Assembly: GCF_011386835.1 (NCBI RefSeq)
Contig: NC_088810.1
Span: 7,564,001-7,628,000 of the forward strand
From: Chrysemys picta bellii
Lineage: Eukaryota
DNA length: 64,000 nucleotides
Reading direction: 5' to 3'
The stretch's first letter is position 1; each line of letters opens with the position of its first letter. The translations under genes were made by a program, and so were the position numbers. Shown one piece after another: positions 13,727 to 55,339 of this stretch. The notes under the pieces are model-generated. The model made no database searches and was not told where the DNA came from. It worked only from the letters and a program-made list of their open reading frames with translations.

Positions 13727-14719
13727 ATGACTTTGAACGTTTCCATCCCACTGGTTCTCGCTGTCTACATCTTCACCTTCCTGACCGGCCTCCCGTCCAA
13801 CCTTCTGGCCTTCTACACCTTCCTGATGAAGGTCCGCCAGAAACCCACCCCCGTCGACATCCTTCTCCTCAACCTCACCGTCTCCGACATCTTCCTCCTC
13901 ATCTTCCTCCCCTTCAAGATGGTGGAGGCTGCCTCAGGCATGGAGTGGCTCTTGCCCCATTTCCTCTGCCCACTCACCAACTACTTGTACTTCAATAGCA
14001 TCTACCTCAGCTCCCTCTTCCTCATGGCCATCAGCGTTGATCGCTACCTGGGGGTGGCCTTTCCCATAAAGTACAGGCTCCGGCGTCATCTGGGTTACAC
14101 CGCTGCCACCTCCGTGGTCTTCTGGGTGGTGGTCTTCACCCACTGCAGCTTTGTCTACATTGTCCAATACGAGGTCCTGAGCCCCAATGGGACCGCAACC
14201 TCCAATAGCACGTCCCACTGCTATGAAAATTTTTCCCCTACACAGCTCCAGATCCTGCTCCCTGTCCGGCTGGAGTTCTTCGTCGTCCTCTTCTGCCTTC
14301 CCTTTACCATCACCATCTTTTGCTACATCAACTTCGTCCGCATCCTGGTGGGCTTGCCCAAGATCCCGGCCCAGAGGAAGCAGCGAGCCATGGGTCTGGC
14401 TCTGGCCACCTTGTTCAACTTCATAGTCTGCTTCACTCCCTACAACCTGTCCCACGTGGTGGGCTTTGTCCAGAACGAGAGCCCCTCCTGGAGGGTGTAC
14501 GTTCTTCTCCTCAGCACCCTCAATGCCGCCTTGGACCCCGCCATCTTCTACTTCTCCTCCACTGCTGTCCAACGGGCCTTCGCCAACTGCCTGGCCGGCC
14601 TGTGGCACAAACTCATCACCATCATGGCCTGGTGCCATCTCCCCTGCTTGAGTCGCTGCGGGGAAGGGGGCAGAGAGGTAGAGGTGACCAGTGAGATGGA
14701 GGCTGAGGAGTTGACTTGA
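13727..14719 (+). CDS. FFAR2: Free fatty acid receptor 2-like GPCR, copy a (330 aa from this ATG; main coding exon starts at 13716)
   Basis: 7TM ORF with GLPSN, LPFK (K2.60), DRYLGVAFP, H4.56, CYENF, PVR(5.39)LE, SH(6.55)VVG, WR(7.35), LDPAIFYFSS. Polypyrimidine acceptor 11 nt before the ATG. FFAR2 versus FFAR3 orthology needs a tree. Confidence 0.85.
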   Translation: MTLNVSIPLVLAVYIFTFLTGLPSNLLAFYTFLMKVRQKPTPVDILLLNLTVSDIFLLIFLPFKMVEAASGMEWLLPHFLCPLTNYLYFNSIYLSSLFLMAISVDRYLGVAFPIKYRLRRHLGYTAATSVVFWVVVFTHCSFVYIVQYEVLSPNGTATSNSTSHCYENFSPTQLQILLPVRLEFFVVLFCLPFTITIFCYINFVRILVGLPKIPAQRKQRAMGLALATLFNFIVCFTPYNLSHVVGFVQNESPSWRVYVLLLSTLNAALDPAIFYFSSTAVQRAFANCLAGLWHKLITIMAWCHLPCLSRCGEGGREVEVTSEMEAEELT

Positions 14720-14810
14720 CTTCCTGGATGAGACCGACTCTCTGCTTCCTCCGCAGATCCTTCCTTGTCCCATGCTCCGCAGAAGCAAGAGATCCTGCAC
14801 TTAAGTTAGG

Positions 14811-15286
14811 TGTGACAGGTTCCCCCCGCCTGGAACTGGGGTACCACTGAGCCTTCTGACCCACCAACCTCTCACACTGTGTTGCTGTGACAAGCTACCA
14901 AACCTGCCTACCTGCACTTTCGCGAGCATACATACTGGTAGGAACGCACCCAGCGGCAGTTACAAGCAGCTCTCTGACCAGCCCCTGCATGAGAAAGCTA
15001 CTCCCACCTCCTCAGGCACGCACCTCCCGCCCGCCCAGCCCCCCACCGGAGTATAAACCCAAAATTATACCGTCTTGTGCTGCACAGGCAACTGTACAGC
15101 GTAAGCTCATAAAATTCGCCCCCACCAGCAATGTGGAGAGGAATATGCAACAGCCGTTTGCTCCTGAGTTATGATTCCCAGGCACTGGTTTAAATAAAGC
15201 AAAAACAAGTTTATTAACTACAAAAGATAGATTCTAAGGGATTATACGGGATAGCAAACAGATCAAAGCAGATAAACAAAGAAACA
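14811..15286. mobile_element. 5' half of an LTR (family of 11233..12416), truncated
   Basis: Starts TGTGACAGGTTCC and is colinear with 11233..11640. Contains AATAAA at 15193..15198. Confidence 0.75.
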
Positions 15287-16174
15287 AACATCCACTGAGT
15301 GGAGAAAACTGCTAGATCTAAATACTGCCTAGTGTCTTAGAGGTTGAAGTTTCAATGGGGTCGGGCCCACAGTCAGAACGGGCCCTGGCGCCTGCCCCTC
15401 CACCCTGCTGCTCCCCGAGGCCCCACCCCCTCTCGGCCTCATCCCCCGAAACCCCTGCTCGCTGTTTGCTCCTCTCCGCCCCCCTCCCCCCCTCGCTCTC
15501 TGCTCGCTACTCTCCATCCCCTATGCCCCTGCAAACGACAGGCGGGGCCTCAAGGGCAAGAGGCTGAGCAGGGGCAGGGCTTTGGGACAGAAGGAGGGGC
15601 AGGGCCATGGTCTGGGCACCGGGGCCCACAAAAGATAAATCCGGCCCTGGCCCCGAGCGTTTGGCCAAACTCCCGCCGGACTTCGGCCTACTTCAGCTCC
15701 TCTCCGCCCCCTGTGCCCCATGCGAGCGACGGGTGGGGCCTCGAGGGCAAAAGGCTGAGCAGGGGCGGGGCTTTGGGGCAGAACGAGGGGTGGGGCCACA
15801 GACCAGGTGCTGGGGTCTAGAAAAGATTAATCTGGCCCTGGCCACGAGCGGTTGGCCAAGCGCCTCCCAGACTTCAGCCTACTTCAGCTTTGCAGTGGGT
15901 GGCCCAACTTCTGCAAGGATCCCTCTCAGTGTCAGGATCGCTATGGTGTCAAGGGCCTTCCTTTGCCGCTGCTGGCTCACAAGTGAAACATAGACCGATT
16001 TCAGCTGGAGGGTCCCTCCAGCGCCCTCCACCCACTCTGGATCTTTTCTTCTCCATGGTTGGGCCCACGGACAAGCAAGCACCTATGGGCTGTAACTGCA
16101 ACGGGGGAACCAAGTGGGGGTTGCTTGAGGGAGGGCAAACAGGCTGCGCTGAGCTTGTTCCATTTCAGGGGAAC

Positions 16175-16998
16175 TGTCAAGGCTGCTTCCCCACTCTGAA
16201 CTTTAGGGTACAAATGTGGGGGCCTGCATGAAAACTTCTAAGCTTAACTACCAGCTTAGATCTGATCCGCTGCCACCACTCTCGATGCTAATTCCCTTCC
16301 CTGGGTAGCCTTGAGAGACTCTTCACCAATTCCCTGGTGAATACAGATCCAAACCCCTTGGATTTTAAAACAAGGAGAAATTAACCATCCCCCCTCCTCC
16401 CTTCCACCAACTTCTGGTGGATCAAGATCCAGCCCCCTTGGATCTAAAAACAAGGAAAATCAATCAGGTTCTTAAAAAGAAGGCTTTTAATTAAAGAAAA
16501 AGGTAAAAATCATCTCTGTAAAATCAGGATGGAAAATAACTTTACAGGGTAATCAAACTTAAAGAGCCCAGAGGACCCCCCTCTAGCCTTAGGTTCAAAG
16601 TTACAGCAAACAGAGGTAAACACCCTGGTAAAAGGTACGTTTACAAGTTGAGAAAACAAAGATAAACTAACACTCCTTGCCTGGCTGTTTACTTACAAGT
16701 TTGAAATATGAGAGACTTGTTCAGAAAGATGTGGAGAGCCTGGATTGATGTCTGGTTCCTCTCGGTCCCAAGAGTGAACAACCCCCAAAACAAAGAGCAC
16801 AAACAAAAGCCCCCCCCCCCCCCCCCCAAGATTTGAAAGTATCTTGTCCCCTTATTGGTCCTTTAGGTCAGATGCCAGCCAGGTTACCTGAGCTTCTTAA
16901 CCCTTTACAGGTAAAAGGATTTTGGAGTCTCTGGCCAGGAGGGATTTTATAGTACTGTACACAGGAGAGCTGTTACCCTTCCCTTTATAGTTATGACA
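16175..16998. mobile_element. Solo LTR with perfect 5-bp TSD
   Basis: TGTCAAGG...TTATGACA flanked by GGAAC/GGAAC. Empty sites at ~1578 and ~21890. Confidence 0.9.
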
Positions 16999-18329
16999 GG
17001 AACCATTTAGTGGCAGATGAACAAGGACCAGGCTCTGTGGGCCCCGAGTTTGCCCTTGTTGAGCTATGGAGAGCTCCTCCTCCTTGGCCACTAGTAGTAG
17101 TGTGTGTTGGCCTCTGTGGAAATGTAGTTACTGCCTCGGTGGGACTGGAACTCAAGAGGCTACAGCCCAGCATGCTACTGCTTGAGCTAAAGTAGCAGTG
17201 CCGTGTGTTGGCGGCAGTAGTAAGGCTGTTATCTGCCATGTGGACGGGAAGGATTTGGACTCTGGACCTTCACCATCAACGCACGGCGCAAGCGGAAGGG
17301 CCGGCGCCGCTTGGTAGCAGCAGTGGGAACAGGCTGTTATTAATTAGGATTTGAACGCAGGACTTCCAGCACCACAATGAAAGGCTCACGTGATCTAAAG
17401 GCGGAGTGCCTTTTGCAGCGGTAGTAGGGCTGTTATCCTCTAGGTGGGTGGGGGATGGGTGATTAGCAGGCACACGTACAATGGACACTGGTCCCTGCAG
17501 GTCTGGACGTACAGCTGAGATCTCCCTCATGCAAGGTCCTGCATGTCCTCCCTTGGCTGGCGGATCTGGCACCCCCCAGGGGCAGTGGCTTTAGCTATGT
17601 ATTAAATAAAGTTATTGATTTATTACCCAATTGAGATTATATTCTTATTTTTCTTCAGGGCTAGTGGAGTGGGGTCTATGGGTTAGAGTCGGGGGTGCTG
17701 GGGACCAGGACTCCTGGGTTCTATCCATGGGAGGGGACCATGGCTAGGAAGTAGGACACACACACATTGTCACTGGCGACTTTTAATTAACTGCAGGGCG
17801 TGAATCTAGCACCGCAGGTGAGCAAATAGCATTTCTGTGGCGCCGATATTAACCAGGGGTTAATGGATAACTGGGCCGGGGCGGGCCTGGGGCAGCTTGG
17901 TGATCTCGCATGGGCAGCTGGAGGAACAACTGGCTTCCAGGCCATGGGACACTGCCACGGAGATGATCTTCCCCCCCCCCCCCCCCCCCGCACTCCCCGG
18001 AGAGCAGGAGCCCACTCACACAGCCCCCTGTAAACACAAACTGTAAGCGGTGGCAGAGCTCGGGGGGAGCCCATGGCTTGCCTAGCAGGGGGCTGCGGGT
18101 CGGGAGTGGCACCAGCAGAGTGCAGGTGTGGGGGGGGACATGCTGGGAGAACAGGGGGCTGCAAGCAGAATTGGACTTGTTTTTGTTAAAGTTGCTTTCA
18201 TTTTTGGAGCGTTGGGGGTTTGGGCTTTGTTTGATTTGGAGGTGGCTGATTTGGCCTTGAAGGTCGACTGGGCTGGGCTGCCTCCCCTCTAAGATCTCAC
18301 CGCTCTGCTTGCACCCTGTGCAGGGTCCG

Positions 18330-19012: not shown

Positions 19013-19063
19013 CCAGCCAAGTGAGGTGCTGAGTGCAAGTCCTTGCGCCCCAGGCCCAGAGAG

Positions 19064-20796: not shown

Positions 20797-22810
20797 GTGG
20801 GTGGGCTCTTGCTCTGGGGAAGCCCCGGGGGTGGGGGTGTCAGGTCCGTGGCAGCGTCCCATGGCCTGGGACCTGGTGGTTCATGTGAAATCCCCTGGCT
20901 GCCCCAGGCTCTGCCCAGGCCAGTTATCCATTAACCCCGGTTAATATCAGCACTACAGAGATACTATTTGCTCACCTGCGGTACCAGATTCACGCCCTGC
21001 CATTAATTGAAAGTCGCCAGTGACAATACGTGTGAGGCCTAGCAATGGTCACTTCCCATGGATAGAATCCAGGAGTCCTACCCCCAACAACTCTAACCCA
21101 TAGACCCCACTCCCTTCCCAAAACTGGGGATAGAACCCATAAGTCCTGGCTCCCAGACCCCACTCACCCCCTCCCCCGACACTAACTCACTAGACCTCAC
21201 CCCAGACCCGAAGGATAAGAAAATAATCTCCGTTGGATAATAAATAAATTATATTATTTAATATGTAGCTAAAGCCACTGCCCCTGGGGGGCGCCAGATC
21301 TGCCAGCGAAGGGAGGAGGTGCAGGACCTTGCGCGAGGGAGATCTCAGCTCTATGTCCAGACCTGGAACAGACCCGCAGGGACCAGTGTCCATTGTACGT
21401 GTGCCTGCTAAACGCCCATCCCCCACCCACCTGGAGGATAACAGCCCTACTACCGCTGTAAAAGGCACTCCGCTTTTAGATCACGTGAGCCCGTCACTGT
21501 GGTGCTGGAAGTCCTGCGTTCAAATCCTTGTTAATAACAGCCTGTTCCCACTGCTGCTACCAAGCGGTGCCGGCCCTTCCGCTTGCACCGTGCATTGATG
21601 GTGAAGGTCCAGAGTCCAAATCCTTCCCATCCACATGGCAGATAATAGCCTTACTACTGCCGCCAACACATGGCACTGCTACTTTAGCTCAAGCAGTAGC
21701 GTGCTGGGCTGTAGCCTCTTGAGTTCCAGTCCCACCGAGGCAGTAACTACATTTCCACAGAGGCCAACACACACTAATAATAGTGGCCAAGGAGGAGGAG
21801 TTCTCCATAGCTTAACAAGGGCAAACTCGGGGTCCACAGGCCCCTCACGGAGCCTGGTCCTTGTTCATCTGCCACTAAATGGTTCCCCTGAAATGGGACC
21901 TGCTCATCCCAGCCTGTTTGCCCTCCCTCAAGCAACCCCCACTTGGTTCTCCCCTTGCAGTTACAGCCCATAGTAGCTTGTTTGCCCGTGGGCCCAACCA
22001 TGGGGAAGGAAAGACTTGGAGTGGGTGGACAGTGATGAAATAGGCCAACTACTTATGTGCCAGCAGTGGCAAAGGAAGGCCCTTGACGCCATGGCAACCC
22101 TGACACTGAGAGAGGCAGGATCTTTGAGGAAGTTGGGCCACTCACTCCAAAGCTGAAGTAGGCCGAAGTCTGGGGGGGCGCTTGGCCAACCGCTCGTGGC
22201 CAGGGCCAAGGATGGACCGTGGCCCCAGCCCTCGCTCTGCCCCAAGGCCCAGCCCCTGCTCAGCCTCTTCTCCCCTGAGGCCCCGCCCGCCACTCGCACC
22301 GGGTGTAAGGGGTGGAGAGGACTGAAGCGGGGGGAAGCTGGGGAGGGGGTGGAGAGGAGCTAACAGTGAGCAATGGCTCTGGAGGAACAGGCTCAGATGG
22401 GCACGGGGGGGGGCTCAGGCTCCAGCAGGGGGGTGGGGCCAAAGTCCCAGCACCAGGGCCCCTTCTAAGTGTGGGCCCGCTCCCGTTGACGCCATTGTAA
22501 ACCCGGTACTGCTCATGGCCCGGCAGCGGAAAAGGAAGGACCTTGACCCCAACTGGAGGTCGGCCAAACCCCTGTGCAAGTTTGGCCAACCACACTGAAG
22601 CTCAGGTAGGCCAAAGCCATGTGGAAGTTGGGCACCAACTCCAAGCCCCGCCGCACGCTGCTGTCTGAGGAGGCCTACGGCCCTCTCGGGAGGTGCAGGG
22701 AAGGACAGAAGATGCCGTCCCGGGCTCAAGGGCAGGATCTCTTGCTCCTGCGGTGCATGGGACAAGGAAGGCTCTGCGGAGGAAGCAGAGAGTCAGTCTC
22801 ATCCTGGGGG

Positions 22811-23806
22811 TCAAGTCGTCGACTCCTCAATCACGTTCTTACTGGCTGCCTTCAACTCGCTGCCCCCTTCTCCGCAGCGAGTCAAGCAGGGGAGATGGCA
22901 CCGGGACAAGATGGTGTTAAGTTTATGCCGCAGGGTGGCCAGGCAGTTGGCGAAGGCCCTTTGGACGGCAGTGGAGGAGAAATAGAAGATGGCGGGGTCC
23001 AAGGCGGCATTGAGCGTGCTGAGGAGAAGAGCGTACACCCTCCAGGAGGGGCTCTTCTTCTGGACAAAGCCCACCACGTGGGACAGGTTGTAGGGGGCGA
23101 AACAGACTATGAAGTTGAACAAGGTAACCAGAGCCAGGCCTACGGCCCGCTGCTTCCTCCGGGCCGAGATGTTGGGCAAGGCCACCAGGATGCGGACGAG
23201 GTTGACGTAGCAGAAGATGGTGACGGTGAAGGGAAGGCAGAAGAGGACGACGAAGAACTCCAGCCGGACAGGGAGCAGGATCTGGCGCTGCGTAGGGGAG
23301 AAATGTTCATAGCAGTTGGACACGTTATTGGAAGTCGCAGTCCCATTGGGGCTCAGGACCTCGTATTGGACAATGTAGACGATGCTGCAGTGGGCGCAGA
23401 TGATCAACCAGAAGACCACGGAGGTGGCGATAGCATATGCTGGACGGCGCCGGAGCTTGTACTTGATGGGAAAGGCCACCCCCAGGTAGCGATCAACGCT
23501 GACGGCCATGAGGAAGAAGGAACTGATGTAGATGCTGTTGTAGTAAAAGTAGTTGGTGAGTGGGCAGAGGAAAGCAGGCAAGGGCCACACCATGCCTGAG
23601 GCAGCCTCTGCCATCTTGAAGGGGAGGAAGATGAGGAGGAAGATGTCGGAGACAGTGAGGTTGAGGAGAAGGATGTCGACAGGGGTGGGTTTTTGGCGGA
23701 CCTTCACCAGGAAGGTGTAGAAGGCCAGAAGGTTGGACGGGAGGCCGGTCAGGAAGGTGAAGATGTAGACAGTGAGAACCAGCGGGATGTAAACATTTGA
23801 ACTCAT
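22811..23806 (-). CDS. FFAR2: Free fatty acid receptor 2-like GPCR, copy b (331 aa from this ATG; exon starts at 23817)
   Basis: Intact 7TM ORF with K2.60, DRY, H4.56, R5.39, H6.55 and R7.35. About 82% identical to copy a. Occupies the FFAR2 position in the FFAR1-FFAR3-FFAR2 same-strand order. Confidence 0.87.
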   Translation of the reverse strand: MSSNVYIPLVLTVYIFTFLTGLPSNLLAFYTFLVKVRQKPTPVDILLLNLTVSDIFLLIFLPFKMAEAASGMVWPLPAFLCPLTNYFYYNSIYISSFFLMAVSVDRYLGVAFPIKYKLRRRPAYAIATSVVFWLIICAHCSIVYIVQYEVLSPNGTATSNNVSNCYEHFSPTQRQILLPVRLEFFVVLFCLPFTVTIFCYVNLVRILVALPNISARRKQRAVGLALVTLFNFIVCFAPYNLSHVVGFVQKKSPSWRVYALLLSTLNAALDPAIFYFSSTAVQRAFANCLATLRHKLNTILSRCHLPCLTRCGEGGSELKAASKNVIEESTT

Positions 23807-23989
23807 CTTCTCAGCTCCTTCAAAGGAGAAAAGGCTCATCAGCTGCCAAAGGAACCCAGGAGTCCTGGTAGTCAGCCCCCTCTCCCTCCAACCCACTAGA
23901 TCCCACTCCCCTCCCAGCAGTGGGGATAGAACCCGGGAGTCCTGGCTCCAGCCCCCTCTCCCTCCAACCCACTAGATCCCACTCCCCTC

Positions 23990-44591: not shown

Positions 44592-44605
44592 CTGCCACCT
44601 AGTGG
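44592..44605 (-). promoter_or_regulatory. CTCF consensus site between FFAR1 and FFAR3
   Basis: Minus strand reads CCACTAGGTGGCAG, a full match to the CTCF core. Confidence 0.6.
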
Positions 44606-45100: not shown

Positions 45101-45211
45101 TGCACTGTGCTGTGAGTGCAGCACACCCATTTCAGCGGGGGCCTGGTCTCAGTCGAATGATAACTACAATAACGATATTAATAATAACGACCCCACTGGA
45201 GCTGGGAAAAC

Positions 45212-45217
45212 TTTATT
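45212..45217 (-). terminator. Candidate FFAR1 poly(A) signal AATAAA
   Basis: First TTTATT I found on the + strand downstream of the FFAR1 stop; implies a ~1.2 kb 3'UTR. Confidence 0.5.
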
Positions 45218-46376
45218 GATTAAATCAGCACGGATCCGTTAGTGGAATGCAATTTACAGCCAGTGGGCAAAAGAGTCAGCGCTAGGGTGGAGTGGTGAGA
45301 CCCCTGGGTGATCCCGATTGGCCCCAGCTGGGATCCGGCCCCATTGCCTCTGTTCCTACTAACTCATTGCTCAGTCCTGGGACATTCTTGCAGGAGCTGG
45401 GATTTCATTGACAGGAGATTTAGGATTCCCGCTGATTGTGGTTTGGAATATTTCTACGTCCAAGTTACACAGACCTCCCAGTTACCTCGGACATATCTCT
45501 AGCACCTTCCATACACAATGGGTAGGAATCATGGCCTCAGTGCCAAAATGCAGCCACCTCTGGGGCGGGGCAGCTGGGGAGCAGCCACACGGGGATGGCT
45601 CACCTGGTGCTGAGATGCAGCCACCTCTGGGTCAGGGCAGCTGGGGAATAACTGCACAGTGACACCTCATAGGCTGGCTCACCCAATGCAGACCTACAGG
45701 ACGGAGTTTAGTCTATTCCCCCAGTAGCAGAGTAAGCCGTACAGTCTATTTCGCCCTAGGGGGGCGAGGGGGTCTGGATCATCTTCTATATCCAATTCTC
45801 CCAAGGCAGGATCCGTCCCATGGGGGTACAAAATGAGCACAAGAAATCTGGACCCTGCCATCACACCCCGCCTGGCATCTCCTCACCCCCCATCCCAGCC
45901 CAGTCAGGGATGTCCCCATCCTAAGGGGTCTTTCAAGACCACCAATGGTCAAGGTCATGACCATGCACTCATGTCTCAGTGGAAAACTGCTACCTCACCC
46001 CCTAGTCCTGTCAAAACCAGACACCTCCTTGTCCTAAGGGGGATATGTACTGACCCATGGATAGGCCAGGTTCTTGGACTCACGTGCCATCCAAGGTCGG
46101 AGACTACTAGTCCCATGGGGATTCTGTAAAGACCATGAATTTCCCGGTCCTTTGTCTTATGTCCTATCCAAGATCGAAGGTTCCGGGTGCCGTGGAGAAT
46201 CTGTAATGGTCATGAATTTCCCGGTCCTTGGTCCTGCGTCCTATCCAAGATTGGAGGCTCCCAGCCCCATGGGGAATTTTTAAGGTTCATGAGCAGCCGG
46301 GTCCCACAGCCCATCCAAGATTGCCAATCTCCCCGAATCCTGTCCCAACAGCGTTTGGTGTCTCCTTGTCTCATGG

Positions 46377-47363
46377 TCACTTGGAGCTCCCCACCCCGGG
46401 GCCTGTACTTCCCTGTGATGCAGCCCCCTTCTCAGGCTGCCCCTTGCCTGCCTCCCTGTGACCCATGGTCATCTTCTGCCGGAAGGAGCTGCAACGCTGC
46501 CCCACGGAGCGCCACACCCAGGCCAGGCCGTGGTCCTTGGCCGAGGAGAGGAAGTAGAAGATGAGCGGGTCCAGGAAGGCGTTGCAGGCACCGGGCAGCA
46601 GCGCCACCCTGCGCCACCAGATGTCCTCGCCGCGGGCGTAGCCCACCACGTGGGACAGGTTATAGGGTCCGAAGCAGAGCACAAAGACAGAGAGCGTGGC
46701 CAAGGCCAGCCGCACCGCCCGGCGCTTCTTCTGCTCGTGGAGACGGGACTTGACGAGGACATGGATGCAGCCGGCGTAGCAGAAGACCGTGATCACCAAG
46801 GGCAGGAAGAACAGGGCCACGGAGAGCTCCAAGCGGACAGGAGCTAGCAGGGCCAGCTGCTCTGGACTGAATTCCTGGTAGCAGGCGGTGCCGTTGCCCA
46901 TAAAGAGGGTGGCGTTGGCGCCCAGCGAAGTCTCCAGGATGAGCAACAGGACGCCGTGAAAGGCCACCAGGGTCCAGATGGCCACACAGACCAGGCAGGA
47001 GTAAAGGGGCTTCTTGTAGAGCTGGTAGCGGATGGGGAAGGCGGCGCCCAGGTAGCGCCCGGCACTGACCGCCGTCAGGAAGCAGGTGCTGGCGTAGAGC
47101 GTGCCGAAGTGGGCCAGGCTGTAGAGAGGGCAGAGGAAGCTTGGTGGGGACCAGCCGGGTGGAACCACCTCCAGGATCTTGAGTGGCAGGATGAGGACGA
47201 AGGCCAGGTCCGAGATGCAGAGGTTGATCATGTAGATGAGGTTGGGGGTGAGGCGGGTGCGGGCGCGGCGGTAGAAGATGTACAGCACCAAGGTGTTGGC
47301 GGGCAAGCCCAGCAGGATGGTGACCGAGTAGACGGCCAGGGCCAGGGTGTCCAGCGGGTCCAT
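46377..47363 (-). CDS. FFAR1: Free fatty acid receptor 1 (GPR40) orthologue, 328 aa
   Basis: FFAR1 signatures RARTRLTPNLIY, LPLK, SAGRYLGAAFP (GRY instead of DRY), FCYAGC and LLPGAC; strong Kozak GCACCATGG; first gene of the cluster in transcription order. Confidence 0.88.
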   Translation of the reverse strand: MDPLDTLALAVYSVTILLGLPANTLVLYIFYRRARTRLTPNLIYMINLCISDLAFVLILPLKILEVVPPGWSPPSFLCPLYSLAHFGTLYASTCFLTAVSAGRYLGAAFPIRYQLYKKPLYSCLVCVAIWTLVAFHGVLLLILETSLGANATLFMGNGTACYQEFSPEQLALLAPVRLELSVALFFLPLVITVFCYAGCIHVLVKSRLHEQKKRRAVRLALATLSVFVLCFGPYNLSHVVGYARGEDIWWRRVALLPGACNAFLDPLIFYFLSSAKDHGLAWVWRSVGQRCSSFRQKMTMGHREAGKGQPEKGAASQGSTGPGVGSSK

Positions 47364-47444
47364 GGTGCCGGCTCAGCGGGGGGTGGAGGAGGGAGGCATC
47401 TCAGCTGGGGCTGGAATGATAACAAGGATGATCCCCCTTCACCG

Positions 47445-48272
47445 TGTCCCCTAGATCCAGCCCCCCATCCCTGCCCCACATCCCCTCAATCCATACCCCA
47501 GATCCCTGCCTCACGGCCCATCCCCTAGATCCACCTCCACATTCCTGCCCCACAGCCGCATCCCCTAGATCCACCCCCCATCCCTGCCCCACGTTCTCTA
47601 GAGCCACACCCCAGATCCCTGTCCCACGACCGCGTTGCCTAGATCCATCTCCACATCCCTGCCCCACGACCACACCCCCTAGATCCACCTCCTCATCCCT
47701 GCCTCATCATTACATCCCCTAGATCGACCCGCCCCCATCCCTGCCCCATGACCATGTCCCTTCGATCCACTCCCATCCCTGCCCCATGGCCACATCTCCT
47801 AGATCCACCCCCCATCCCTGCCCTACGGCTGCATCCCCTAGATCCACCTCCACTTTCCTGCCCCATGTCCACACACCCTGGATCTACCCCCAGTCTCTGC
47901 CTCATGGCCACGTCCCCTAGATCCACCCCCATCCCTGCCCCATGACCATGTCCCCTCGATCCACTCCCATCCCCGCCCCATAGCCGCGTCCCATAGATCC
48001 ACCCCCAGATCCCTGCCCCACGACCATGTCCCCTCGATCCACTCCCATTCCTGTCCCACGGCCGCGTCCCCTAGATCCACCTCCTCATTCCTGCCCTACG
48101 GCCGCATGTCCTAGATCCACCCCCAGATTCCTGCCCCATGGCTGTGTCCCCTCGATCCACCATGATCTTTGCCCCATCACTGCATCCCCTAGATCCACCT
48201 CCATGTCCCTGCCCCATGGCCGCGTCCCCTAGATCCCCCCCCCCATCCCTGCCCCATGGCCACATCCCCTAG
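47445..48272. repeat. ~39-40 bp VNTR (~21 units), G-rich on the FFAR1 sense strand
   Basis: Recurring CCCCTAGATCCACCCCCATCCCTGCCCCATGGCCACAT-like unit. Confidence 0.9.
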
Positions 48273-48454
48273 CTCCTACCTCTCTGGCTCAGCTCCCCAC
48301 ACCTGTGCTCCCGCCCGGCCTGGCTCCAGGGACGTGGCGAGCTGCTGTGCCAGCAGTCGCTGGGGGCGTGGATCAGCCTGCTCCCAGGTGGGATGAAATT
48401 GCCCAGAAGGAATTGTTCAACCAGGGCAGCTTCATCCCCCGGCTACGTGGCTGG

Positions 48455-48470
48455 GCCATAAAGCCATAAA
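48455..48470. promoter_or_regulatory. Tandem CDX/posterior-HOX motifs GCCATAAA x2 in the predicted FFAR1 promoter
   Basis: GCCATAAAGCCATAAA read directly; function inferred. Confidence 0.4.
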
Positions 48471-49269
48471 AACCCGGGGAGGCGCAGGGGGCCGCCCTGC
48501 CCCACGGGCCCTTCTGCCTCGTGCCCCCCAGCTGGAGCGACTGAGAGGGAGAGAACGGCCGCCGAGACGGGGGCACGGCTGGATTATCCCCCACGGGGAA
48601 TGGATCCCTCTGTGTGGACCCGGAGCTGGGACCCCGAAGTAGGACAGACACCCAGCCCCGCAATGTGACCCGATAAATGGGACTCGCCCCCTCATCCTGG
48701 GAGGAGATTTTCCCCACTTCAGAGGCAGCTGCCGCTCATCAATCCCTGCGTGGCGGTTTCCTAGCTGCCCCGCACCAGAGGTGGCTGCATCTCAGTGCTG
48801 GGTGATCCATCCCCATACAGAGTCGCTGTGTGGCTCTTCCCCAGCTGCTCCGCCCCAGAGCTAGACGCATTTCTTGGGGACTCCTTTAAAAGCAGCTGGA
48901 TCCCCCCCTTGTTAGTGACAAGCAGCATAGCATGGCATTCAGGTGTGCTACAGGTGCTTTCTACCAACTGCCAACGGAGTGGTTTCTCCTAGCGCCAGAG
49001 CCGAGGCTAGAACCCAGGAGTCCTGGCTCCCAGCCCCGCTGCTGTCAGCCCATCAGTTGTCAGGGCCTGTTATTTTGATGGCTGATACAAAGCTCAGTGA
49101 GCGAACTCCCCCGAGATCCCTATCGCTCTGCTTGTTTCCGTGACTCTGTGGTATTTCCGCTGGGAGAGATAATGTGGTTTTAGAGACACACAGGAAGGCA
49201 AGGTCAACTCACTAGAGTGAATTGCTCCCTCTGAAGTGCTGCTGCAGGAAACCCCCAGCATGATCTCAT

Positions 49270-49760
49270 GACAGAGCTGGCTGCATCTCAGGCCCAGCGA
49301 GCTGTCCCCATGTGGCGTTATGTGCGGCTGTTCCCCAGCTGCCCCGCCCCAGAGGTGGCTGCATCTCAGCACCAGGCTAGGCCTCCCCACGCAGTGTTGT
49401 GTGCAGCTGTTCCCCAGCTGCCCCACCCCAGCACTGTTCCCCAGCTGCATATCAGCACTGAGCGAGCCATCCCAAGCGGCGTTATGTGCAGCTGTTCCCC
49501 AGCTGCCCCGCCCCAGAGGTGGCTGCATCTCAGCGCTGGGTGAGCCATCCCCATACGATGTTATGTGCAGCTGTTCCCCAACTTCCCCACCCCAGTGGTG
49601 GCTGCATCTTGTAGTCGGTCAAGGTGTCCCCATGTGGCGTTATGTGTGGCTGTTCCCCGGCTGCCCCGCCCCAGAAGTGGCTGCATCTCAGCACCAAGCT
49701 AGGCCTCCCCATGCAGTGTTGTGTGCAGCTGTTCCCCAACTGCCCCACCTGAATCTCAGA
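49270..49760. repeat. Degenerate tandem repeat (CAGCTGCCCCGCCCCAGAGGTGGCTGCATCTCAG family)
   Basis: Several direct copies; related copies at ~48760 and, inverted, at ~45540. Confidence 0.7.
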
Positions 49761-51039
49761 GTCCGTCAAGGCATTCCCAGCTGCCTCACCCCTTACAGGC
49801 ATGAAGTCACTCACACCCACACCATAGCAGGAAACTGAGGCACGGGTTAGAGAAGGACAGAATGGAGGAGAACCCAAGCGTCCAGATTCCCGGCTTCCCC
49901 TGCTTTTAACCCAGCAAGCTTGCATTGTGCTGGGGTATCAGGGCTAGCCCTGACTGCCAGGGGAGAGCCCCCACCCTGCCCCCTGCAGCACAGCGCCCCC
50001 TAGTGCTGCCCTGGGGCCTTGGGGCCAGCCCTGGCTGCCAGGGAAGAGCCCCCACTCCCCCCCACACACATACCCTGCAGCACAGCACCCCCAAGTGCCA
50101 CCCTGGGGCTTTGGGGCCAGCCCAGACTGCCAGAGGAGAGCCCCCATCCCACCCCCTGCAGCACAGCGCCCCCTGTGCCACGCTCTGGCATTGCATCCCC
50201 TCGTACAGGACGCACAGATCTCTCAAATAAATACAGCTCCTGGCAAATGCTCATAGATCAATTTATTTCTTTTCCTGCTGTGGCAGCTGCGCCGGTTTCT
50301 CTTGGCAGCGGGGGCCGAACGCTCCGGTGCTTTCCAGCTGAGAGCTGTTTACAGAACTTGCTATTTGACCAGTTCCTGCTGCAGTTAATAGCCTGTAAAG
50401 TATTTTTATTGCTGATCCTACGGCGGGAAGAGATGCCAATTACATCCCTGATTCCTCGTGCCAGGCGCGTGCTGGCCCAGGCACTTGTTAATCAGAAAGG
50501 AAAGCACTGAGTGACTGCATGCGGCTGTCCCCTGGCTGTCCCACCCCAGAGCTGGCTGCATCCCAGCACCGGATGAGCCGTCCCCGTGCAGCGTTGCTGT
50601 GAAACAGACACTGCTCATAAACATTTCAGGGAGCATTGCAAATCCTTCCCCCTCCCCCCGCAATTAGATCTCACTCCCCTCCCAGAGCTGGGGATAGAAC
50701 CCAGGAGTCCTGGCTCCCAGCCCCCCCCCGCTCTAACCACTAGACCCCACTCCCCTCCCAGAGCTGGGGCTGGAACCCAGGAATCCTGGCTCCCAGCCCC
50801 CGCACTCCAACCTATAGCGCACTAGAAAAGCTACAGAAGGTTGATCCGGCTCATCCCCTAGCACCCAGGGAGGAGGGGGGGACTTGGCCAAACCCACAGC
50901 CTGTGGGCCTCAGGAGGGTCGCCGTGCTGGGGGCCTAAACCTCAGGGGGCAGCACCTGGAGAGTCCCGGGGATAGCTGGGTGGGGGGGTAACCAGGGAAA
51001 GCACCCCCTGCTGCAAACAGGTGTGTCCTACAGCCAGCC

Positions 51040-51095
51040 GGGGAAGTGTGTGTGTCCCTGCTGCCCCCTGCTGGCTGGAACACCCCATCCCTTGC

Positions 51096-51140
<45 letters not shown>

Positions 51141-51253
51141 GCTGCCCCCTGCTGGCTGGAACACCCCATCCTTTGCCGTGTGTGTGTGCGTGTGTGCGTG
51201 TGTGTGTCCCTGCTGCCCCCTGCTGGCTGGAACACCCCATCCCTTACTCTGTG
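51040..51253. repeat. (GT)n-containing ~60-80 bp tandem repeat running into the gap
   Basis: Three copies of GTGTGTCCCTGCTGCCCCCTGCTGGCTGGAACACCCCATCC. Confidence 0.85.
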
Positions 51254-51753
51254 NNNNNNNNNNNNNNNNNNNNNNNNNNNNNNNNNNNNNNNNNNNNNNN
51301 NNNNNNNNNNNNNNNNNNNNNNNNNNNNNNNNNNNNNNNNNNNNNNNNNNNNNNNNNNNNNNNNNNNNNNNNNNNNNNNNNNNNNNNNNNNNNNNNNNNN
51401 NNNNNNNNNNNNNNNNNNNNNNNNNNNNNNNNNNNNNNNNNNNNNNNNNNNNNNNNNNNNNNNNNNNNNNNNNNNNNNNNNNNNNNNNNNNNNNNNNNNN
51501 NNNNNNNNNNNNNNNNNNNNNNNNNNNNNNNNNNNNNNNNNNNNNNNNNNNNNNNNNNNNNNNNNNNNNNNNNNNNNNNNNNNNNNNNNNNNNNNNNNNN
51601 NNNNNNNNNNNNNNNNNNNNNNNNNNNNNNNNNNNNNNNNNNNNNNNNNNNNNNNNNNNNNNNNNNNNNNNNNNNNNNNNNNNNNNNNNNNNNNNNNNNN
51701 NNNNNNNNNNNNNNNNNNNNNNNNNNNNNNNNNNNNNNNNNNNNNNNNNNNNN
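51254..51753. other. Assembly gap, exactly 500 N
   Basis: Counted directly. A round size suggests a scaffolder join of unknown true length. Confidence 0.98.
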
Positions 51754-53234
51754 CGTAGCTAAAGCCACTGCCCCTGGGGGGCGCCAGATCTGCCAGCGAA
51801 GGGAGGAGGTGCAGGACCTTGCGCGAGGGAGATCTCAGCTCTATGTCCAGACCTGGAACAGACCCGCAGGGACCAGTGTCCATTGTACGTGTGCCTGCTA
51901 AACGCCCATCCCCCACCCACCTGGAGGATAACAGCCCTACTACCGCTGTAAAAGGCACTCCGCTTTTAGATCACGTGAGCCCGTCACTGTGGTGCTGGAA
52001 GTCCTGCGTTCAAATCCTTGTTAATAACAGCCTGTTCCCACTGCTGCTACCAAGCGGCGCGGGCCCTTCCGCTTGCACCGTGCATTGATGGTGAAGGTCC
52101 AGAGTCCAAATCCTTCCCATCCACATGGCAGATAATAGCCTTACTACTGCCGCCAACACATGGCACTGCTACTTTAGCTCAAGCAGTAGCGTGCTGGGCT
52201 GTAGCCTCTTGAGTTCCAGTCCCACCAAGGCAGTAACTACATTTCCACAGAGGCCAACACACACTAATAATAGTGGCCAAGGAGGAGGAGTTCTCCATAG
52301 CTTAACAAGGGCAAACTCGGGGTCCACAGGCCCCTCACGGAGCCTGGTCCTTGTTCATCTGCCACTAAATGGTTCCCCTGAAATGGGACCTGCTCATCCC
52401 AGCCTGTTTGCCCTCCCTCAAGCAACCTCCACTTGGTTCTCCCCTTGCAGTTACAGCCCATAGTAGCTTGTTTGCCCGTGGGCCCAACCATGGGGAAGGA
52501 AAGACCTGGAGTGGGTGGACAGTGATGAAATAGGCCAACCACTTATGTGCCAGCAGTGGCAAAGGAAGGCCCTTGACGCCATGGCGACCCTGACACTGAG
52601 AGAGGCCGGATCTTTGAGGAAGTTGGGCCACTCACTCCAAAGCTGAAGTAGGCCAAAGTCTGGGGGGGCGCTTGGCCAACTGCTCGTGGCCAGGGCAAGG
52701 ATGGACCGTGGCCCCAGCCCTCGCTCTGCCCCAAGGCCCAGCCCCTGCTCAGCCTCTTCTCCCCTGAGGCCCCGCCCGCCACTCGCACCGGGTGTAAGGG
52801 GTGGAGAGGACTGAAGCGGGGGGAAGCTGGGGAGGGGGTGGAGAGGAGCTAACAGTGAGCAATGGCTCTAGAGGAACAGGCTCAGTGGGGCACGGGGGGG
52901 GCTCAGGCTCCAGCAGGGGGGTGGGGCCAAAGTCCCAGCACCAGGGCCCCTTCTAAGTGTGGGCCCGCTCCCGTTGACGCCATTGTAAACCCGGTACTGC
53001 TCATGGCCCGGCAGCGGAAAAGGAAGGACCTTGACCCCAACTGGAGGTCGGCCAAACCCCTGTGCAAGTTTGGCCAACCACACTGAAGCTCAGGTAGGCC
53101 AAAGCCATGTGGAAGTTGGGCACCAACTCCAAGCCCCGCCGCACGCTGCTGTCTGAGGAGGCCTACGGCCCTCTCGGGAGGTGCAGGGAAGGACAGAAGA
53201 TGCCGTCCCGGGCTCAAGTGCAGGATCTCTTGTT

Positions 53235-54271
53235 TAGGGTTACCATATTTCAGCAAGCAAAAAAGAGGACGGGAGGAGCCCCACCCCTGTCCTGCCCCTG
53301 CCCCTCCCACTTCCCGCCTCCCCAGAACCCCCAACCCTCCCCCCGTTCCTTGTCCCCTGACTGCCCCCTCCTGGGACCCCTGCCCCTAACTGCCCCCCAG
53401 GACTCCACTCCCTATCTAAGCCTCCCTGCCTCTTGTCCCCTGACTGCCCCAACCCTTATCCACACCCCCACCCCCAGACAGACCCCTGGGACTCCCACGC
53501 CCCATCCAACCACTCCCCACCCCCTGACAGCCCCCCCCCCAGAACTCCCAACCCATCTAAACCCCTCTGCTCCCTGTCCCCTGACTGCTCCGATCCATCT
53601 CCCCACCCCTGCCACCTGACAGCCCCCCCCCAGAACTCCCAAACACCCCCCCCGCTCCTTGTCCCCTGACTGCCCCCTCCTGGGACCCCTGCTCCTAACT
53701 GCCCTCCAGAACCCCACCCCCCACCTAAGACTCCCTGTTCCTTGTCCCCTAACTGCCCCCTCCTAAGACCCCCCCCAACTGCCCCCCAGGACCCTACCCC
53801 CTACCTGTACCCTGACTGCCCAAAACTTTCTCCACTCCCCCCAAAAAGCCCCCCCCAGTTTCTTGACTGCCCCCTCCAGAACCTCCCTGCCCCCTGACCT
53901 CCTTACCCTGCTGCTCAGAACAGAGTGTTGGGCTCTGTGCAGCCGAGCCGGACACGTGGCTGAGCTCCCCAGCACAACAAAACCCGGTCCCTGGCCCTGC
54001 ACAACAAAACCCGGTCTGGCCCTGCACAGTGCTGCCGGACTGGGCTGCAAGGGAGCTGCCGGCTCAGAATGCAGGGCGGATCCGGCTCCTCTACAGCTGC
54101 TCCGGAGTCCAGCCCGGGACTTCCCTGCAGCCCTCCCAGCCGCTCACTCTGCTCTGCCGGGGGAGGGGGAAATCCCGGACATTGTGAGTGCTTTACAAAT
54201 TCCCCCCGGACGCTATTTTTAGCACAAAAAGGAGGACATGTCCGGGTAAATCCGGACGAATGGTAACCCTA
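53235..54271. mobile_element. hAT non-autonomous element (1037 bp) in the predicted 3'UTR of copy b'
   Basis: TIR TAGGGTTACCAT; TSD CTCTTGTT/CTCTTGCT; single CTCTTGCT at the empty site (~22739). Confidence 0.92.
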
Positions 54272-54343
54272 CTCTTGCTCCTGCGGTGCATGGGACAAGG
54301 AAGGCTCTGCGGAGGAAGCAGAGAGTCAGTCTCATCCTGGGGG

Positions 54344-55339
54344 TCAAGTCGTCGACTCCTCAATCACGTTCTTACTGGCTGCCTTCAACTCGCTGCCCCC
54401 TTCTCCGCAGTGAGTCAAGCAGGGGAGATGGCACCGGGACAAGATGGTGTTAAGTTTATGCCACAGGGTGGCCAGGCAGTTGGCGAAGGCCCTTTGGACG
54501 GCAGTGGAGGAGAAATAGAAGATGGCGGGGTCCAAGGCGGCATTGAGCGTGCTGAGGAGAAGAGCGTACACCCTCCAGGAGGGGCTCTTCTTCTGGACAA
54601 AGCCCACCACGTGGGACAGGTTGTAGGGGGCGAAACAGACTATGAAGTTGAACAAGGTAACCAGAGCCAGGCCTACGGCCCGCTGCTTCCTCCGGGCCGA
54701 GATGTTGGGCAAGGCCACCAGGATGCGGACGAGGTTGACGTAGCAGAAGATGGTGACGGCGAAGGGAAGGCAGAAGAGGACGACGAAGAACTCCAGACGG
54801 ACAGGGAGCAGGATCTGGCGCTGCGTAGGGGAGAAATGTTCATAGCAGTTGGACACGTTTTTGGAAGTCGCAGTCCCATTGGGGCTCAGGACCTCGTATT
54901 GGACAATGTAGACGATGCTGCAGTGGGCGCAGATGATCAACCAGAAGACCACGGAGGTGGCGATAGCATATGCTGGACGGCGCCGGAGCTTGTACTTGAT
55001 GGGAAAGGCCACCCCCAGGTAGCGATCAACGCTGACGGCCATGAGGAAGAAGGAGCTGATGTAGATGCTGTTGTAGTAAAAGTAGTTGGTGAGTGGGCAG
55101 AGGAAAGCAGGCAAGGGCCACACCATGCCTGAGGCAGCCTCCGCCATCTTGAAGGGGAGGAAGATGAGGAGGAAGATGTCGGAAACAGTGAGGTTGAGGA
55201 GAAGGATGTCGACGGGGGTGGGTTTTTGGCGGACCTTCACCAGGAAGGTGTAGAAGGCCAGAAGGTTGGACGGGAGGCCGGTCAGGAAGGTGAAGATGTA
55301 GACAGTGAGAACCAGCGGGATGTAAACATTTGAACTCAT
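54344..55339 (-). CDS. FFAR2: FFAR2-like GPCR, copy b' (331 aa); recent paralog or alternative haplotype of b
   Basis: Intact ORF; 9 nt differences from copy b by manual count, 4 of them changing amino acids. Confidence 0.8.
   Translation of the reverse strand: MSSNVYIPLVLTVYIFTFLTGLPSNLLAFYTFLVKVRQKPTPVDILLLNLTVSDIFLLIFLPFKMAEAASGMVWPLPAFLCPLTNYFYYNSIYISSFFLMAVSVDRYLGVAFPIKYKLRRRPAYAIATSVVFWLIICAHCSIVYIVQYEVLSPNGTATSKNVSNCYEHFSPTQRQILLPVRLEFFVVLFCLPFAVTIFCYVNLVRILVALPNISARRKQRAVGLALVTLFNFIVCFAPYNLSHVVGFVQKKSPSWRVYALLLSTLNAALDPAIFYFSSTAVQRAFANCLATLWHKLNTILSRCHLPCLTHCGEGGSELKAASKNVIEESTT

What the first reader, a model, noticed from the sequence alone, without database searches (positions are those of the whole stretch)
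13727..55339. Expanded short-chain fatty acid receptor repertoire in a reptile (three FFAR2-like ORFs in window, a fourth implied)
Seen: three intact FFAR2-like ORFs plus FFAR3 and FFAR1. All keep the carboxylate-binding positions H4.56, R5.39, H6.55 and R7.35, and none is pseudogenised. Established: humans have one FFAR2; a large FFAR2 expansion has been reported in chicken. Inference: an independent turtle expansion by tandem and inverted duplication, which may tune sensing of gut fermentation products or immune signalling.
Basis: partly seen in the sequence, partly recalled or inferred. Interest (0 to 1): 0.72.

Follow-up and report, generated by a model that had tools for sequence, protein, structure and literature searches.

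The report
Painted turtle fatty-acid receptor gene cluster
The window holds the painted turtle's cluster of short-chain fatty acid receptor genes, enlarged by old turtle-specific duplications, but the third "extra" copy sits in a 31.5 kb repeat that starts at a scaffold gap and is more likely a retained second haplotype than a real gene.

Summary
All five ORFs are intact class A GPCRs closest to solved human FFAR2/FFAR3. All keep H4.56, R5.39, H6.55 and R7.35.

The window is Chrysemys picta bellii SLU_Cpb5.0, chromosome CM062337.1 (record = window + 7,564,000). RefSeq already models these genes.

The gap at 51254-51753 is intergenic, so no receptor ORF crosses it. It is also the exact left edge of a direct copy (51755-63999 = 21265-32473, 98.5-98.9% identical). 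The copy continues past the window through a second FFAR3-like and a second FFAR1-like gene to CD22. The assembly therefore carries a 31.5 kb unit [FFAR2b-FFAR3L-FFAR1L] twice, with the junction hidden in the gap.

Malaclemys and Trachemys have one unit; Emys shows one CD22-FFAR1L-FFAR3L stretch, and its FFAR2 side was not fetched. The copies differ by 1.43% in substitutions, only 2-3 times this animal's mean heterozygosity. The older reference shows only copy-2 states.

My odds: copy E is a retained haplotype about 65%, a real duplication or copy-number variant about 35%.

The older expansion is real. Turtle FFAR2-like genes form one clade, sister to alligator. A and B are an inverted pair shared with Malaclemys. 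Two further copies lie or are expected left of the window. The scan had flagged the gap-edge copy before (s1-328411).

The parts
13727..14719 (+). FFAR2-like A (330 aa from this ATG; the RefSeq-style start is at 13694, giving 341 aa)
   Evidence: Intact ORF. 7tm_1 at E 5.8e-35. Human FFAR3 309 bits, FFAR2 308 bits. 95% identical to Malaclemys XP_053867197.1.
22811..23806 (-). FFAR2-like B (331 aa), in unit 1
   Evidence: Intact ORF. 7tm_1 at E 7e-37. Human FFAR2 330 bits. Identical to P0007; RefSeq isoform X1 is XP_065429755.1.
38742..39701 (-). FFAR3-like C (319 aa), in unit 1
   Evidence: Intact ORF. Human FFAR3 306 bits against FFAR2 285 bits. Falls in a clade with turtle and bird 'FFAR3-like' proteins, support 100.
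46377..47363 (-). FFAR1-like D (328 aa), in unit 1
   Evidence: Intact ORF. Sits next to CD22 in Malaclemys, Trachemys and Emys. Human FFAR2 221, FFAR3 198, FFAR1 195 bits. Its clade holds turtles, squamates and amphibians.
54344..55339 (-). FFAR2-like E (331 aa), in unit 2; 9 nt and 4 aa different from B
   Evidence: RefSeq isoform X1 is XP_065430282.1.
51254..51753 (.). 500-N scaffold gap, intergenic; the join between unit 1 and unit 2
   Evidence: 500 N is the size I know as 3D-DNA's usual join spacer (my own knowledge); the assembly paper confirms 3D-DNA was used but does not state a gap size (PMC13077969). The left flank is colinear with Malaclemys and Trachemys up to 51245-51248. The right flank restarts at the homologue of 21265.
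21265..51253 (.). Unit 1 of the repeated block (B, C, D)
   Evidence: Self-alignment. Comparison with L004.
51754..64000 (.). Unit 2 of the repeated block. It starts at the gap and runs off the window; E is here, and C', D' and CD22 follow outside.
   Evidence: D' lies 31,513 bp from D.
12420..17695 (.). Arm of the old inverted duplication that carries A. Its partner is 25080-21173, which carries B.
   Evidence: 12420-14805 matches 25080-22725 at 87-90%, and 15833-17695 matches 22208-21173 at 82-90%, both inverted.
51046..51253 (.). About 80-bp tandem repeat with (TG)n runs, at which the left contig ends
53233..54271 (.). 1,039-bp insertion with 12-bp terminal inverted repeats, found only in unit 2, 72 bp downstream of E's stop codon
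   Evidence: Absent from unit 1, Malaclemys and Trachemys.
1..9522 (.). Orthologue of the flank downstream of the Malaclemys A2 gene (a second A-type FFAR2-like). It implies a further copy just left of the window.
   Evidence: L009:11599-21029 matches window 1-9522 at 96.6%.

Best explanation
This is the FFAR gene cluster of the western painted turtle. The order is CD22, FFAR1-like (D), FFAR3-like (C), FFAR2-like B, then FFAR2-like A in inverted orientation. A type-2 FFAR2-like gene lies 23 kb further left. A second A-type copy (A2) is expected just left of the window, but it was seen only in Malaclemys and in protein models from the older Chrysemys reference, not confirmed in this assembly.

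The FFAR2-like genes multiplied within turtles after the split from archosaurs. The A/B inverted pair is at least as old as the emydid-Platysternon ancestor. All copies keep the two arginines and two histidines that hold the carboxylate of short-chain fatty acids, and they evolve under moderate purifying selection. They are most likely working SCFA-sensing GPCRs whose paralogues differ in tuning or expression; this last step is inferred, not shown.

The third in-window copy, E, is part of a 31.5 kb unit (E, C', D') that repeats B, C and D across a 500-N Hi-C scaffold join. This unit is more likely the second haplotype of the same locus left in the primary assembly (about 65%) than a true tandem duplication. 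On that reading the true in-window FFAR2-like count is two. With the type-2 gene and the expected A2 the genome would have four, as in Malaclemys.
For: Genes and residues.

Turtle-specific clade and the A, A2, B and type-2 subclades.

Same B/inverted-A layout in Malaclemys.

Selection: dN/dS is 0.49 for A against B. Pooled over the three unit 1/unit 2 gene pairs the differences are 11 nonsynonymous to 14 synonymous.

For the haplotype reading:
- The copy starts at the first base after the gap, and unit 1 runs up to the gap.
- The gap lies between two same-orientation copies on one scaffold, one of the four hallmarks of false duplication in Ko et al. 2022 (PMC9516828).
- Malaclemys and Trachemys have a single CD22-D-C-B unit. 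Emys shows CD22-D-C.
- The assembly is a hifiasm primary assembly scaffolded with tigmint/ARCS and 3D-DNA. The animal's heterozygosity is 0.48-0.71% and its identity to Trachemys is 98.2% (PMC13077969). The unit 1/unit 2 substitution distance of 1.43% is therefore only 2-3 times the mean allelic distance.
- Gene A, outside the repeat, already differs by 8 of 341 aa from the older reference's model. This shows high local polymorphism.
- The older reference's protein models carry unit-2 states at 4 of 4 B/E sites and 1 of 1 D sites.
- Other first-reader notes on this genome list many duplications that abut gaps over normally single-copy genes such as L1CAM, KDM5C and SKIV2L (unchecked leads).
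Against: - The unit 1/unit 2 distance (K2P 0.0143, ts:tv 89:37) is about 0.6-0.7 of the Chrysemys-Trachemys and Chrysemys-Malaclemys distances at the same locus (0.021 and 0.024).
- No 1-kb window has fewer than 3 differences. That would be a deep and evenly old pair of alleles.
- The units also differ by a 1,039-bp transposon-like insertion.
- FFAR3-like C in unit 1 has 5 derived amino-acid changes against 0 in C'. This asymmetry is more usual for paralogues.
- The left contig ends in a (TG)n repeat, and the first base of the right contig mismatches unit 1. A real junction at a microsatellite would explain both.
- A haplotypic end overlap needs two assembly breaks 30 kb apart. A true duplication needs one.
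- RefSeq annotates both units.
- No read depth, k-mer or expression data could be obtained.
Confidence: 0.6

Rival explanations
1. The 31.5 kb unit is a real tandem duplication in the Chrysemys lineage. It copied FFAR2b, FFAR3-like and FFAR1-like together. It arose after the split from Trachemys and Malaclemys, and its junction lies in an unassembled microsatellite. The painted turtle then has an extra functional copy of all three receptor types.
For: - Divergence of 1.43% with a natural transition bias and symmetric derived changes, 39 against 42.
- B and E are sister in the protein tree, with Malaclemys and Trachemys outside.
- All six genes are intact with pooled dN/dS about 0.26.
- The nonsynonymous load in C against C' is asymmetric.
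- Unit 2 has its own insertion.
- The left contig ends in a (TG)n array.
- From my own knowledge, the human locus holds a recent FFAR3/GPR42 tandem copy, so the region is prone to such events.
Against: - The junction is unsequenced, and the copy starts exactly at the scaffold join.
- HiFi reads should resolve copies that are 1.4% apart.
- There is one unit in Malaclemys and Trachemys, and Emys shows CD22 directly next to its FFAR1-like gene.
- The older reference shows only unit-2 states.
- The divergence is within reach of this animal's heterozygosity.
- Similar gap-edge duplications over single-copy genes are noted elsewhere in this assembly.
Confidence: 0.28
2. The duplication is real but polymorphic, a copy-number variant. 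Some painted turtle haplotypes carry two units and others carry one.
For: The older Washington-state reference appears to have only the unit-2 type, while the Minnesota animal's assembly shows both.
Against: The same observations fit plain allelism. There are no population data, and the older assembly was not available as DNA in these collections.
Confidence: 0.07
3. A and B are orthologues of two separate ancient sauropsid FFAR2 genes, so there was no turtle-specific expansion.
For: None found. Squamates do have two FFAR2-like clades of their own.
Against: All 44 turtle FFAR2-like rows form one clade (99/97) that excludes alligator, tuatara and squamates. A and B fall inside one cryptodire subclade.
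Confidence: 0.03

Closest known systems
Chicken FFAR2 (GPR43) expansion, Meslin et al. 2015 (PMC4453067)
   Same: Both are lineage-specific multiplications of FFAR2-type genes in one genomic cluster. The paralogues keep the two Arg and two His that bind the carboxylate (one search compared).
   Different: The scale differs: 26 sequences were compared in chicken, against about 4 per emydid turtle and about 5 in softshell and pig-nosed turtles. Turtles keep FFAR3-like and FFAR1-like neighbours, whereas Meslin et al. found neither in chicken. The turtle copies are old (A/B dS 0.19) rather than a recent, gene-converting array. By the tree the two expansions are independent.
Human FFAR1-FFAR3-GPR42-FFAR2 cluster next to CD22
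   Same: The gene order matches: CD22, FFAR1-type, FFAR3-type, FFAR2-type. The four binding residues are the same in the FFAR2 and FFAR3 types. From my own knowledge, the human locus also holds a recent tandem copy (GPR42).
   Different: Turtles add inverted and further FFAR2-like copies, plus a fourth family member ('FFAR3-like X1', P0308) that groups with squamate, amphibian, lungfish and shark genes. The turtle FFAR1-like gene has His at 6.55, where Meslin et al. report Asn in human FFAR1.
False heterotype (haplotypic) duplications in assemblies, Ko et al. 2022 (PMC9516828)
   Same: Two near-identical copies lie in the same orientation on one scaffold, separated by a gap. The locus is more heterozygous than average, and both copies are annotated as extra genes.
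   Different: Read depth, linked-read discordance and k-mer multiplicity, the other three criteria, could not be tested. The divergence is at the high end for alleles.

Membership tests
FFAR2/FFAR3-type short-chain fatty acid receptors (class A GPCR) | Rhodopsin-family 7TM domain | tested here: met
   PF00001 at E 1e-35 to 1e-37 in all five proteins.
FFAR2/FFAR3-type short-chain fatty acid receptors (class A GPCR) | Closest solved relatives are FFAR2 or FFAR3 | tested here: met
   A: FFAR3 309, FFAR2 308 bits. B: FFAR2 330, FFAR3 305 bits. C: FFAR3 306, FFAR2 285 bits. FFAR1 scores only 127-144 bits for these three.
FFAR2/FFAR3-type short-chain fatty acid receptors (class A GPCR) | Carboxylate-binding H4.56, R5.39, H6.55 and R7.35 | tested here: met
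   These align with H140, R180, H242 and R255 of human FFAR2 chain 8j23_A. They are conserved in A, B, C, D and E.
FFAR2/FFAR3-type short-chain fatty acid receptors (class A GPCR) | One-to-one orthology of A, B and E with mammalian FFAR2 rather than FFAR3 | tested here: inconclusive
   A scores equally against human FFAR2 and FFAR3. No mammalian sequences were among the listed hits, so none are in the trees. Amphibian 'FFAR2' and 'FFAR3-like' genes do separate with the A/B clade and the C clade.
FFAR2/FFAR3-type short-chain fatty acid receptors (class A GPCR) | Activation by C1-C6 carboxylates and G-protein coupling | not testable with these tools
   Needs receptor assays.
FFAR1 (GPR40) | Position next to CD22 at the head of the cluster | tested here: met
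   CD22-like Ig gene, then the D orthologue, then the C orthologue, in Malaclemys, Trachemys, Emys and Chrysemys unit 2.
FFAR1 (GPR40) | Best sequence match is FFAR1 | tested here: not met
   D scores FFAR2 221, FFAR3 198 and FFAR1 195 bits. No mammalian or bird FFAR1 appears among the 120 best hits.
FFAR1 (GPR40) | Asn at 6.55, as in human FFAR1 | tested here: not met
   D has His. Meslin et al. report Asn in human FFAR1.
False haplotypic duplication (Ko et al. 2022) | A gap between two copies on the same scaffold | tested here: met
   The copy begins at 51754/51755, directly after the 500-N gap.
False haplotypic duplication (Ko et al. 2022) | Half (haploid) read depth and 1-copy k-mers on both copies | not testable with these tools
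False haplotypic duplication (Ko et al. 2022) | Single copy in close relatives or in other assemblies | tested here: met
   One CD22-D-C-B unit in Malaclemys and Trachemys, and CD22-D-C in Emys. The older reference models show one type only.
False haplotypic duplication (Ko et al. 2022) | Copy divergence within the range of allelic divergence | tested here: inconclusive
   1.43% against mean heterozygosity of 0.48-0.71%. This is 2-3 times the mean: possible for alleles but high.
Lineage-specific FFAR2 expansion (chicken type) | Paralogues of one lineage are monophyletic and clustered in the genome | tested here: met
   The turtle clade has support 99/97. The genes lie within about 130 kb of one chromosome.

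The most novel reading that the evidence does not exclude
The 31.5 kb repeat is real. The painted turtle lineage recently duplicated its whole FFAR2-FFAR3-FFAR1-like module in tandem, a parallel to the human FFAR3/GPR42 copy. One FFAR3-like copy (C, in the window) has since taken five amino-acid changes while its twin took none, which would be an early case of divergence between receptor twins.
Probability: 0.3. Interest if true: 0.45.

Novelty: new member of a known kind. Interest (0 to 1): 0.3.

Why it matters
Lineage-specific growth of the short-chain fatty acid receptor family is known from chicken. Showing that turtles expanded it independently would give comparative material for how hosts tune sensing of fermentation products. 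The turtle paralogue classes (type-2, A, A2, B) are old and conserved, and they sit beside retained FFAR3-like and FFAR1-like genes.

The practical point is a warning. One of the three copies counted in this window, along with a second FFAR3-like and a second FFAR1-like gene that RefSeq annotates just outside it, may be a false gene gain produced by the assembly. Any copy-number survey built on this reference should check that first.

Tried and rejected
Depth, junction reads and expression were not tested.
- Exact look-ups. The 331-aa B and E proteins are not on record as gene products, because the annotation keeps longer isoforms. I used cluster members and neighbouring genes instead. No Logan (read-assembly) proteins fell in the B/E clusters, so they give no independent sighting.
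- Divergence as proof of paralogy. I first took the 1.43% unit 1/unit 2 divergence, 0.6-0.7 of the intergeneric distance, as near proof of real paralogues. I withdrew that after the assembly paper gave 0.48-0.71% heterozygosity and 98.2% identity to Trachemys.
- Window start as a deleted copy. I thought window 8-2538 was a copy of the A module with its gene deleted. Comparison with the Malaclemys A2 locus shows it is simply the downstream flank of a further copy lying left of the window.
- First-base mismatch. The mismatch at 51754 and the (TG)n end of the left contig looked like a real junction. However, the chance of a contig starting one base from a true breakpoint is about as small as the chance of a SNP at that base. 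I judged it not decisive.
- Per-kb divergence test. Dispersion index 4.2, range 3-30 differences per kb. This is overdispersed but has no identical tracts, so it does not discriminate.
- Polarised changes. These are symmetric, 39 against 42, so they do not discriminate either.
- Older assembly. The older Chrysemys assembly was not available as DNA, so only its UniRef and RefSeq protein models could be compared.
- Big representative-protein search. Not run, since it is costly and the family was not in doubt. The trees therefore hold no mammalian or chicken FFAR2.
- Literature. I found no paper on turtle or reptile FFAR2 copy number.

Full report
**The gap, tested first.** The only N run is 51254-51753, 500 bases long. 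It lies between D (46377-47363) and E (54344-55339). No receptor ORF crosses it, so no reading frame depends on it. The long ORFs that the ORF listing reports across it are translations of N.

The two sides of the gap are not continuous in the sense of related genomes. The left flank is colinear with the spacer between the FFAR1-like gene and CD22 in Malaclemys and Trachemys, right up to 51245-51248. It ends inside an approximately 80-bp tandem repeat with (TG)n runs. The right flank starts at the homologue of window 21265, about 30 kb back.

Locus L004, the second unit in the same assembly, and the loci from other species were used only for coordinates, gene tables and identity counts. I printed no letters from the stretch that corresponds to the gap.

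**The observation.** Five intact ORFs are present, and tblastn finds no further fragment. All five hit Pfam 7tm_1. Bit scores against solved human receptors:

| Protein | FFAR2 | FFAR3 | FFAR1 |
|---|---|---|---|
| A | 308 | 309 | 129 |
| B | 330 | 305 | 144 |
| C | 285 | 306 | 127 |
| D | 221 | 198 | 195 |

The alignment of A to chain 8j23_A, which has native numbering, puts A's residues on H140, R180, H242 and R255. The five-way alignment shows the same H, R, H and R in all five proteins.

**Where the window comes from.** Exact look-ups place D at CM062337.1:7,610,377-7,611,363 of GCA_011386835.2, Chrysemys picta bellii. Record coordinate therefore equals window coordinate plus 7,564,000. 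RefSeq already models the genes as 'free fatty acid receptor 2-like', '3-like' and '1-like'.

The wider cluster, runs in this order:
- 'FFAR3-like X1' (P0308, a fourth family member)
- type-2 FFAR2-like (XP_005312792.2, 23.3 kb left of the window)
- the window: A, B, C, D, gap, E
- C', then D' (31,513 bp from D), then CD22

Window 1-9522 is 96.6% identical to the flank just downstream of a second A-type gene (A2) in Malaclemys. A Chrysemys A2-type protein exists among models from the older reference: P0016 is 93.5% identical to Malaclemys A2. I could not confirm A2 in this assembly.

**The old duplications.** A(+) and B(-) lie tail to tail. 12420-14805 matches 25080-22725, and 15833-17695 matches 22208-21173, both inverted, at 82-90% identity. 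For A against B, dS is 0.19, dN is 0.096 and omega is 0.49. Malaclemys has the same B/inverted-A layout.

In a careful ML tree of 67 proteins:
- All turtle FFAR2-like proteins form one clade (99/97), sister to the alligator proteins (99/96). Tuatara and squamates fall outside.
- Pleurodires and softshell plus pig-nosed turtles have expansions of their own.
- Hard-shelled cryptodires have a type-2 clade and an A/B clade.
- A-type includes Platysternon and the emydids (94/98).
- A2 (Malaclemys, Terrapene) is sister to A (Chrysemys A, Malaclemys P0001); together they form the emydid A-type clade (95/91).
- B-type holds Terrapene, Chrysemys B+E, Malaclemys and Trachemys.

The expansion is therefore turtle-specific, old and shared. 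By species-tree logic it is independent of the chicken expansion described by Meslin et al. 2015 (PMC4453067). Chicken genes themselves were not in my trees.

**The tandem part.** 21265-32473 equals 51755-63999 at 98.5-98.9% identity. The copy continues outside the window. Comparing the second unit with the first:
- C' is intact over all 319 codons, with 10 nt differences.
- D' differs from D by 6 nt and 2 aa.
- CD22 follows D'.

The assembly thus holds the unit [B, C, D] twice, with a period of about 31.5 kb and the junction inside the gap.

Malaclemys and Trachemys have one unit, CD22-D-C-B, and in Malaclemys the inverted A follows. Emys shows CD22-D-C.

**Real duplication or artefact.** Over about 9 kb of the C-D region, substitution-only K2P distances are:

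| Comparison | K2P |
|---|---|
| Unit 1 vs unit 2 | 0.0143 (ts:tv 89:37) |
| Chrysemys vs Trachemys | 0.021 |
| Chrysemys vs Malaclemys | 0.024 |
| Chrysemys vs Emys | 0.039 |

Differences per kb range from 3 to 30, with mean 12.8. Derived changes are symmetric, 39 against 42.

I first read this depth as excluding alleles. The assembly paper changes that (PMC13077969). This is a hifiasm HiFi plus Hi-C primary assembly. It was scaffolded with tigmint/ARCS and 3D-DNA and curated with Bionano. The animal's heterozygosity is 0.48-0.71%, and the paper's first, 10x-based assembly was 98.2% identical to Trachemys. The two units are therefore only 2-3 times as far apart as average alleles.

Local polymorphism is demonstrably high. 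Gene A, outside the repeat, differs at 8 of 341 residues from the older reference's RefSeq model. That older reference's models carry unit-2 states at all four B/E sites and at the one D site covered. A collapsed pair of paralogues would more likely give a mosaic.

A gap between same-orientation copies on one scaffold is one of the four hallmarks of false duplication in Ko et al. 2022 (PMC9516828). First-reader notes on this genome list many other duplications at gaps over genes that are normally single-copy. Those notes are unchecked.

Several points argue against the artefact reading:
- The divergence is high for alleles and never drops to zero.
- Unit 2 has a private 1,039-bp insertion with 12-bp terminal inverted repeats, 72 bp past E's stop codon.
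- C has 5 derived amino-acid changes and 1 derived synonymous change, while C' has 0 and 4 (my Fisher exact calculation gives about 0.05 two-sided).
- A (TG)n array at a true junction would explain the contig break with one event rather than two.

I put the retained-haplotype reading at about 65% and a real duplication, fixed or polymorphic, at about 35%.

**Names.** C groups with turtle and bird 'FFAR3-like' proteins and with amphibian FFAR3-like proteins. It scores best against human FFAR3, so 'FFAR3-like' is fair.

D holds FFAR1's syntenic place beside CD22. Its clade contains only turtles, squamates and amphibians among the best 120 hits. It scores higher against human FFAR2 than FFAR1, and it has His rather than Asn at 6.55. 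'FFAR1-like' is a positional name, not a tested membership. Orthology of A and B to mammalian FFAR2 specifically is not settled, because no mammalian sequences were in the trees.

**How it most likely works.**
- Shown: intact 7TM genes with the full carboxylate-binding tetrad, under purifying but somewhat relaxed selection, arranged in a conserved cluster.
- Inferred: they are SCFA-activated GPCRs, and the old paralogue classes (type-2, A, A2, B) persist because they differ in ligand tuning, coupling or tissue of expression.

Nothing here tests ligand, coupling or expression.

**Novelty.** Searches found the chicken paper and a salmon study, but nothing on turtle or reptile FFAR2 copy number. 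The genes are already in RefSeq. I file the real part as a new member of a known kind (lineage-specific FFAR2 expansion). I flag the recent copy as a probable false gene gain.

**Tools and limits.** The large representative-protein search was not run.

Noticed in passing
window 26007-27615 and its copy at 57533-59141; also 31094-31969: Fragments of a Penelope-like retroelement lie inside the repeated block: a reverse transcriptase ORF (RVT_1, E 5e-12) followed by a GIY-YIG nuclease ORF (E 4e-5). More diverged copies, about 92% identical, lie at 30881-31631, 34028-34577 and 62417-63160.
   Followed up: partly
window 53233-54271: A 1,039-bp, 64% GC insertion with 12-bp perfect terminal inverted repeats and internal repeats, found only in unit 2, 72 bp after E's stop codon. 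It is absent from unit 1, Malaclemys and Trachemys, so a TIR element moved after the two units diverged.
   Followed up: partly
window 38742-39701 (C) compared with L004:17602-18561 (C'): Polarised with three emydid outgroups, the window's FFAR3-like copy carries all 5 amino-acid changes (F3, V12, F108, A198, T202) and 1 synonymous change. The other copy carries 4 synonymous changes only.
   Followed up: partly
window 13694-14719 (A): The 341-aa product differs at 8 scattered residues from the older RefSeq model of the same gene (XP_005312791.2). In 6 of the 8, the older allele matches Malaclemys. This is unusually high protein polymorphism, or a gene-model or paralogue mix-up in the older assembly.
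   Followed up: partly
window 46377-47363 (D) and its relatives: The FFAR1-like clade holds turtles, squamates and amphibians, with no bird or mammal among the 120 best hits. It has His at 6.55. It may be a family member lost or strongly diverged in birds and mammals.
   Followed up: partly
tree; proteins P0146, P0151, P0152, P0162: Waterbird 'FFAR3-like' proteins group with the turtle FFAR3-like clade (support 100) on a very long branch, although Meslin et al. found no FFAR3 in chicken. Their amino-acid composition is unlike the rest of the alignment.
   Followed up: no
window 47434-48282 and 49280-49750: Two tandem-repeat arrays, 75-80% self-identity, lie in the spacer upstream of D. The first array aligns poorly between units and between species.
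   Followed up: no
L010 (record 7,507,271-7,540,698): A fourth FFAR family gene ('FFAR3-like isoform X1', 338 aa, gene span 13.4 kb) lies left of the type-2 FFAR2-like gene. It groups with squamate, amphibian, lungfish and shark genes rather than with FFAR3-like C.
   Followed up: partly
window 21091-21195, 50665-50801 and about 30 other sites: A short dispersed repeat of about 60-130 bp, 80-95% identical between copies, is scattered through the cluster, including near both ends of unit 1.
   Followed up: no
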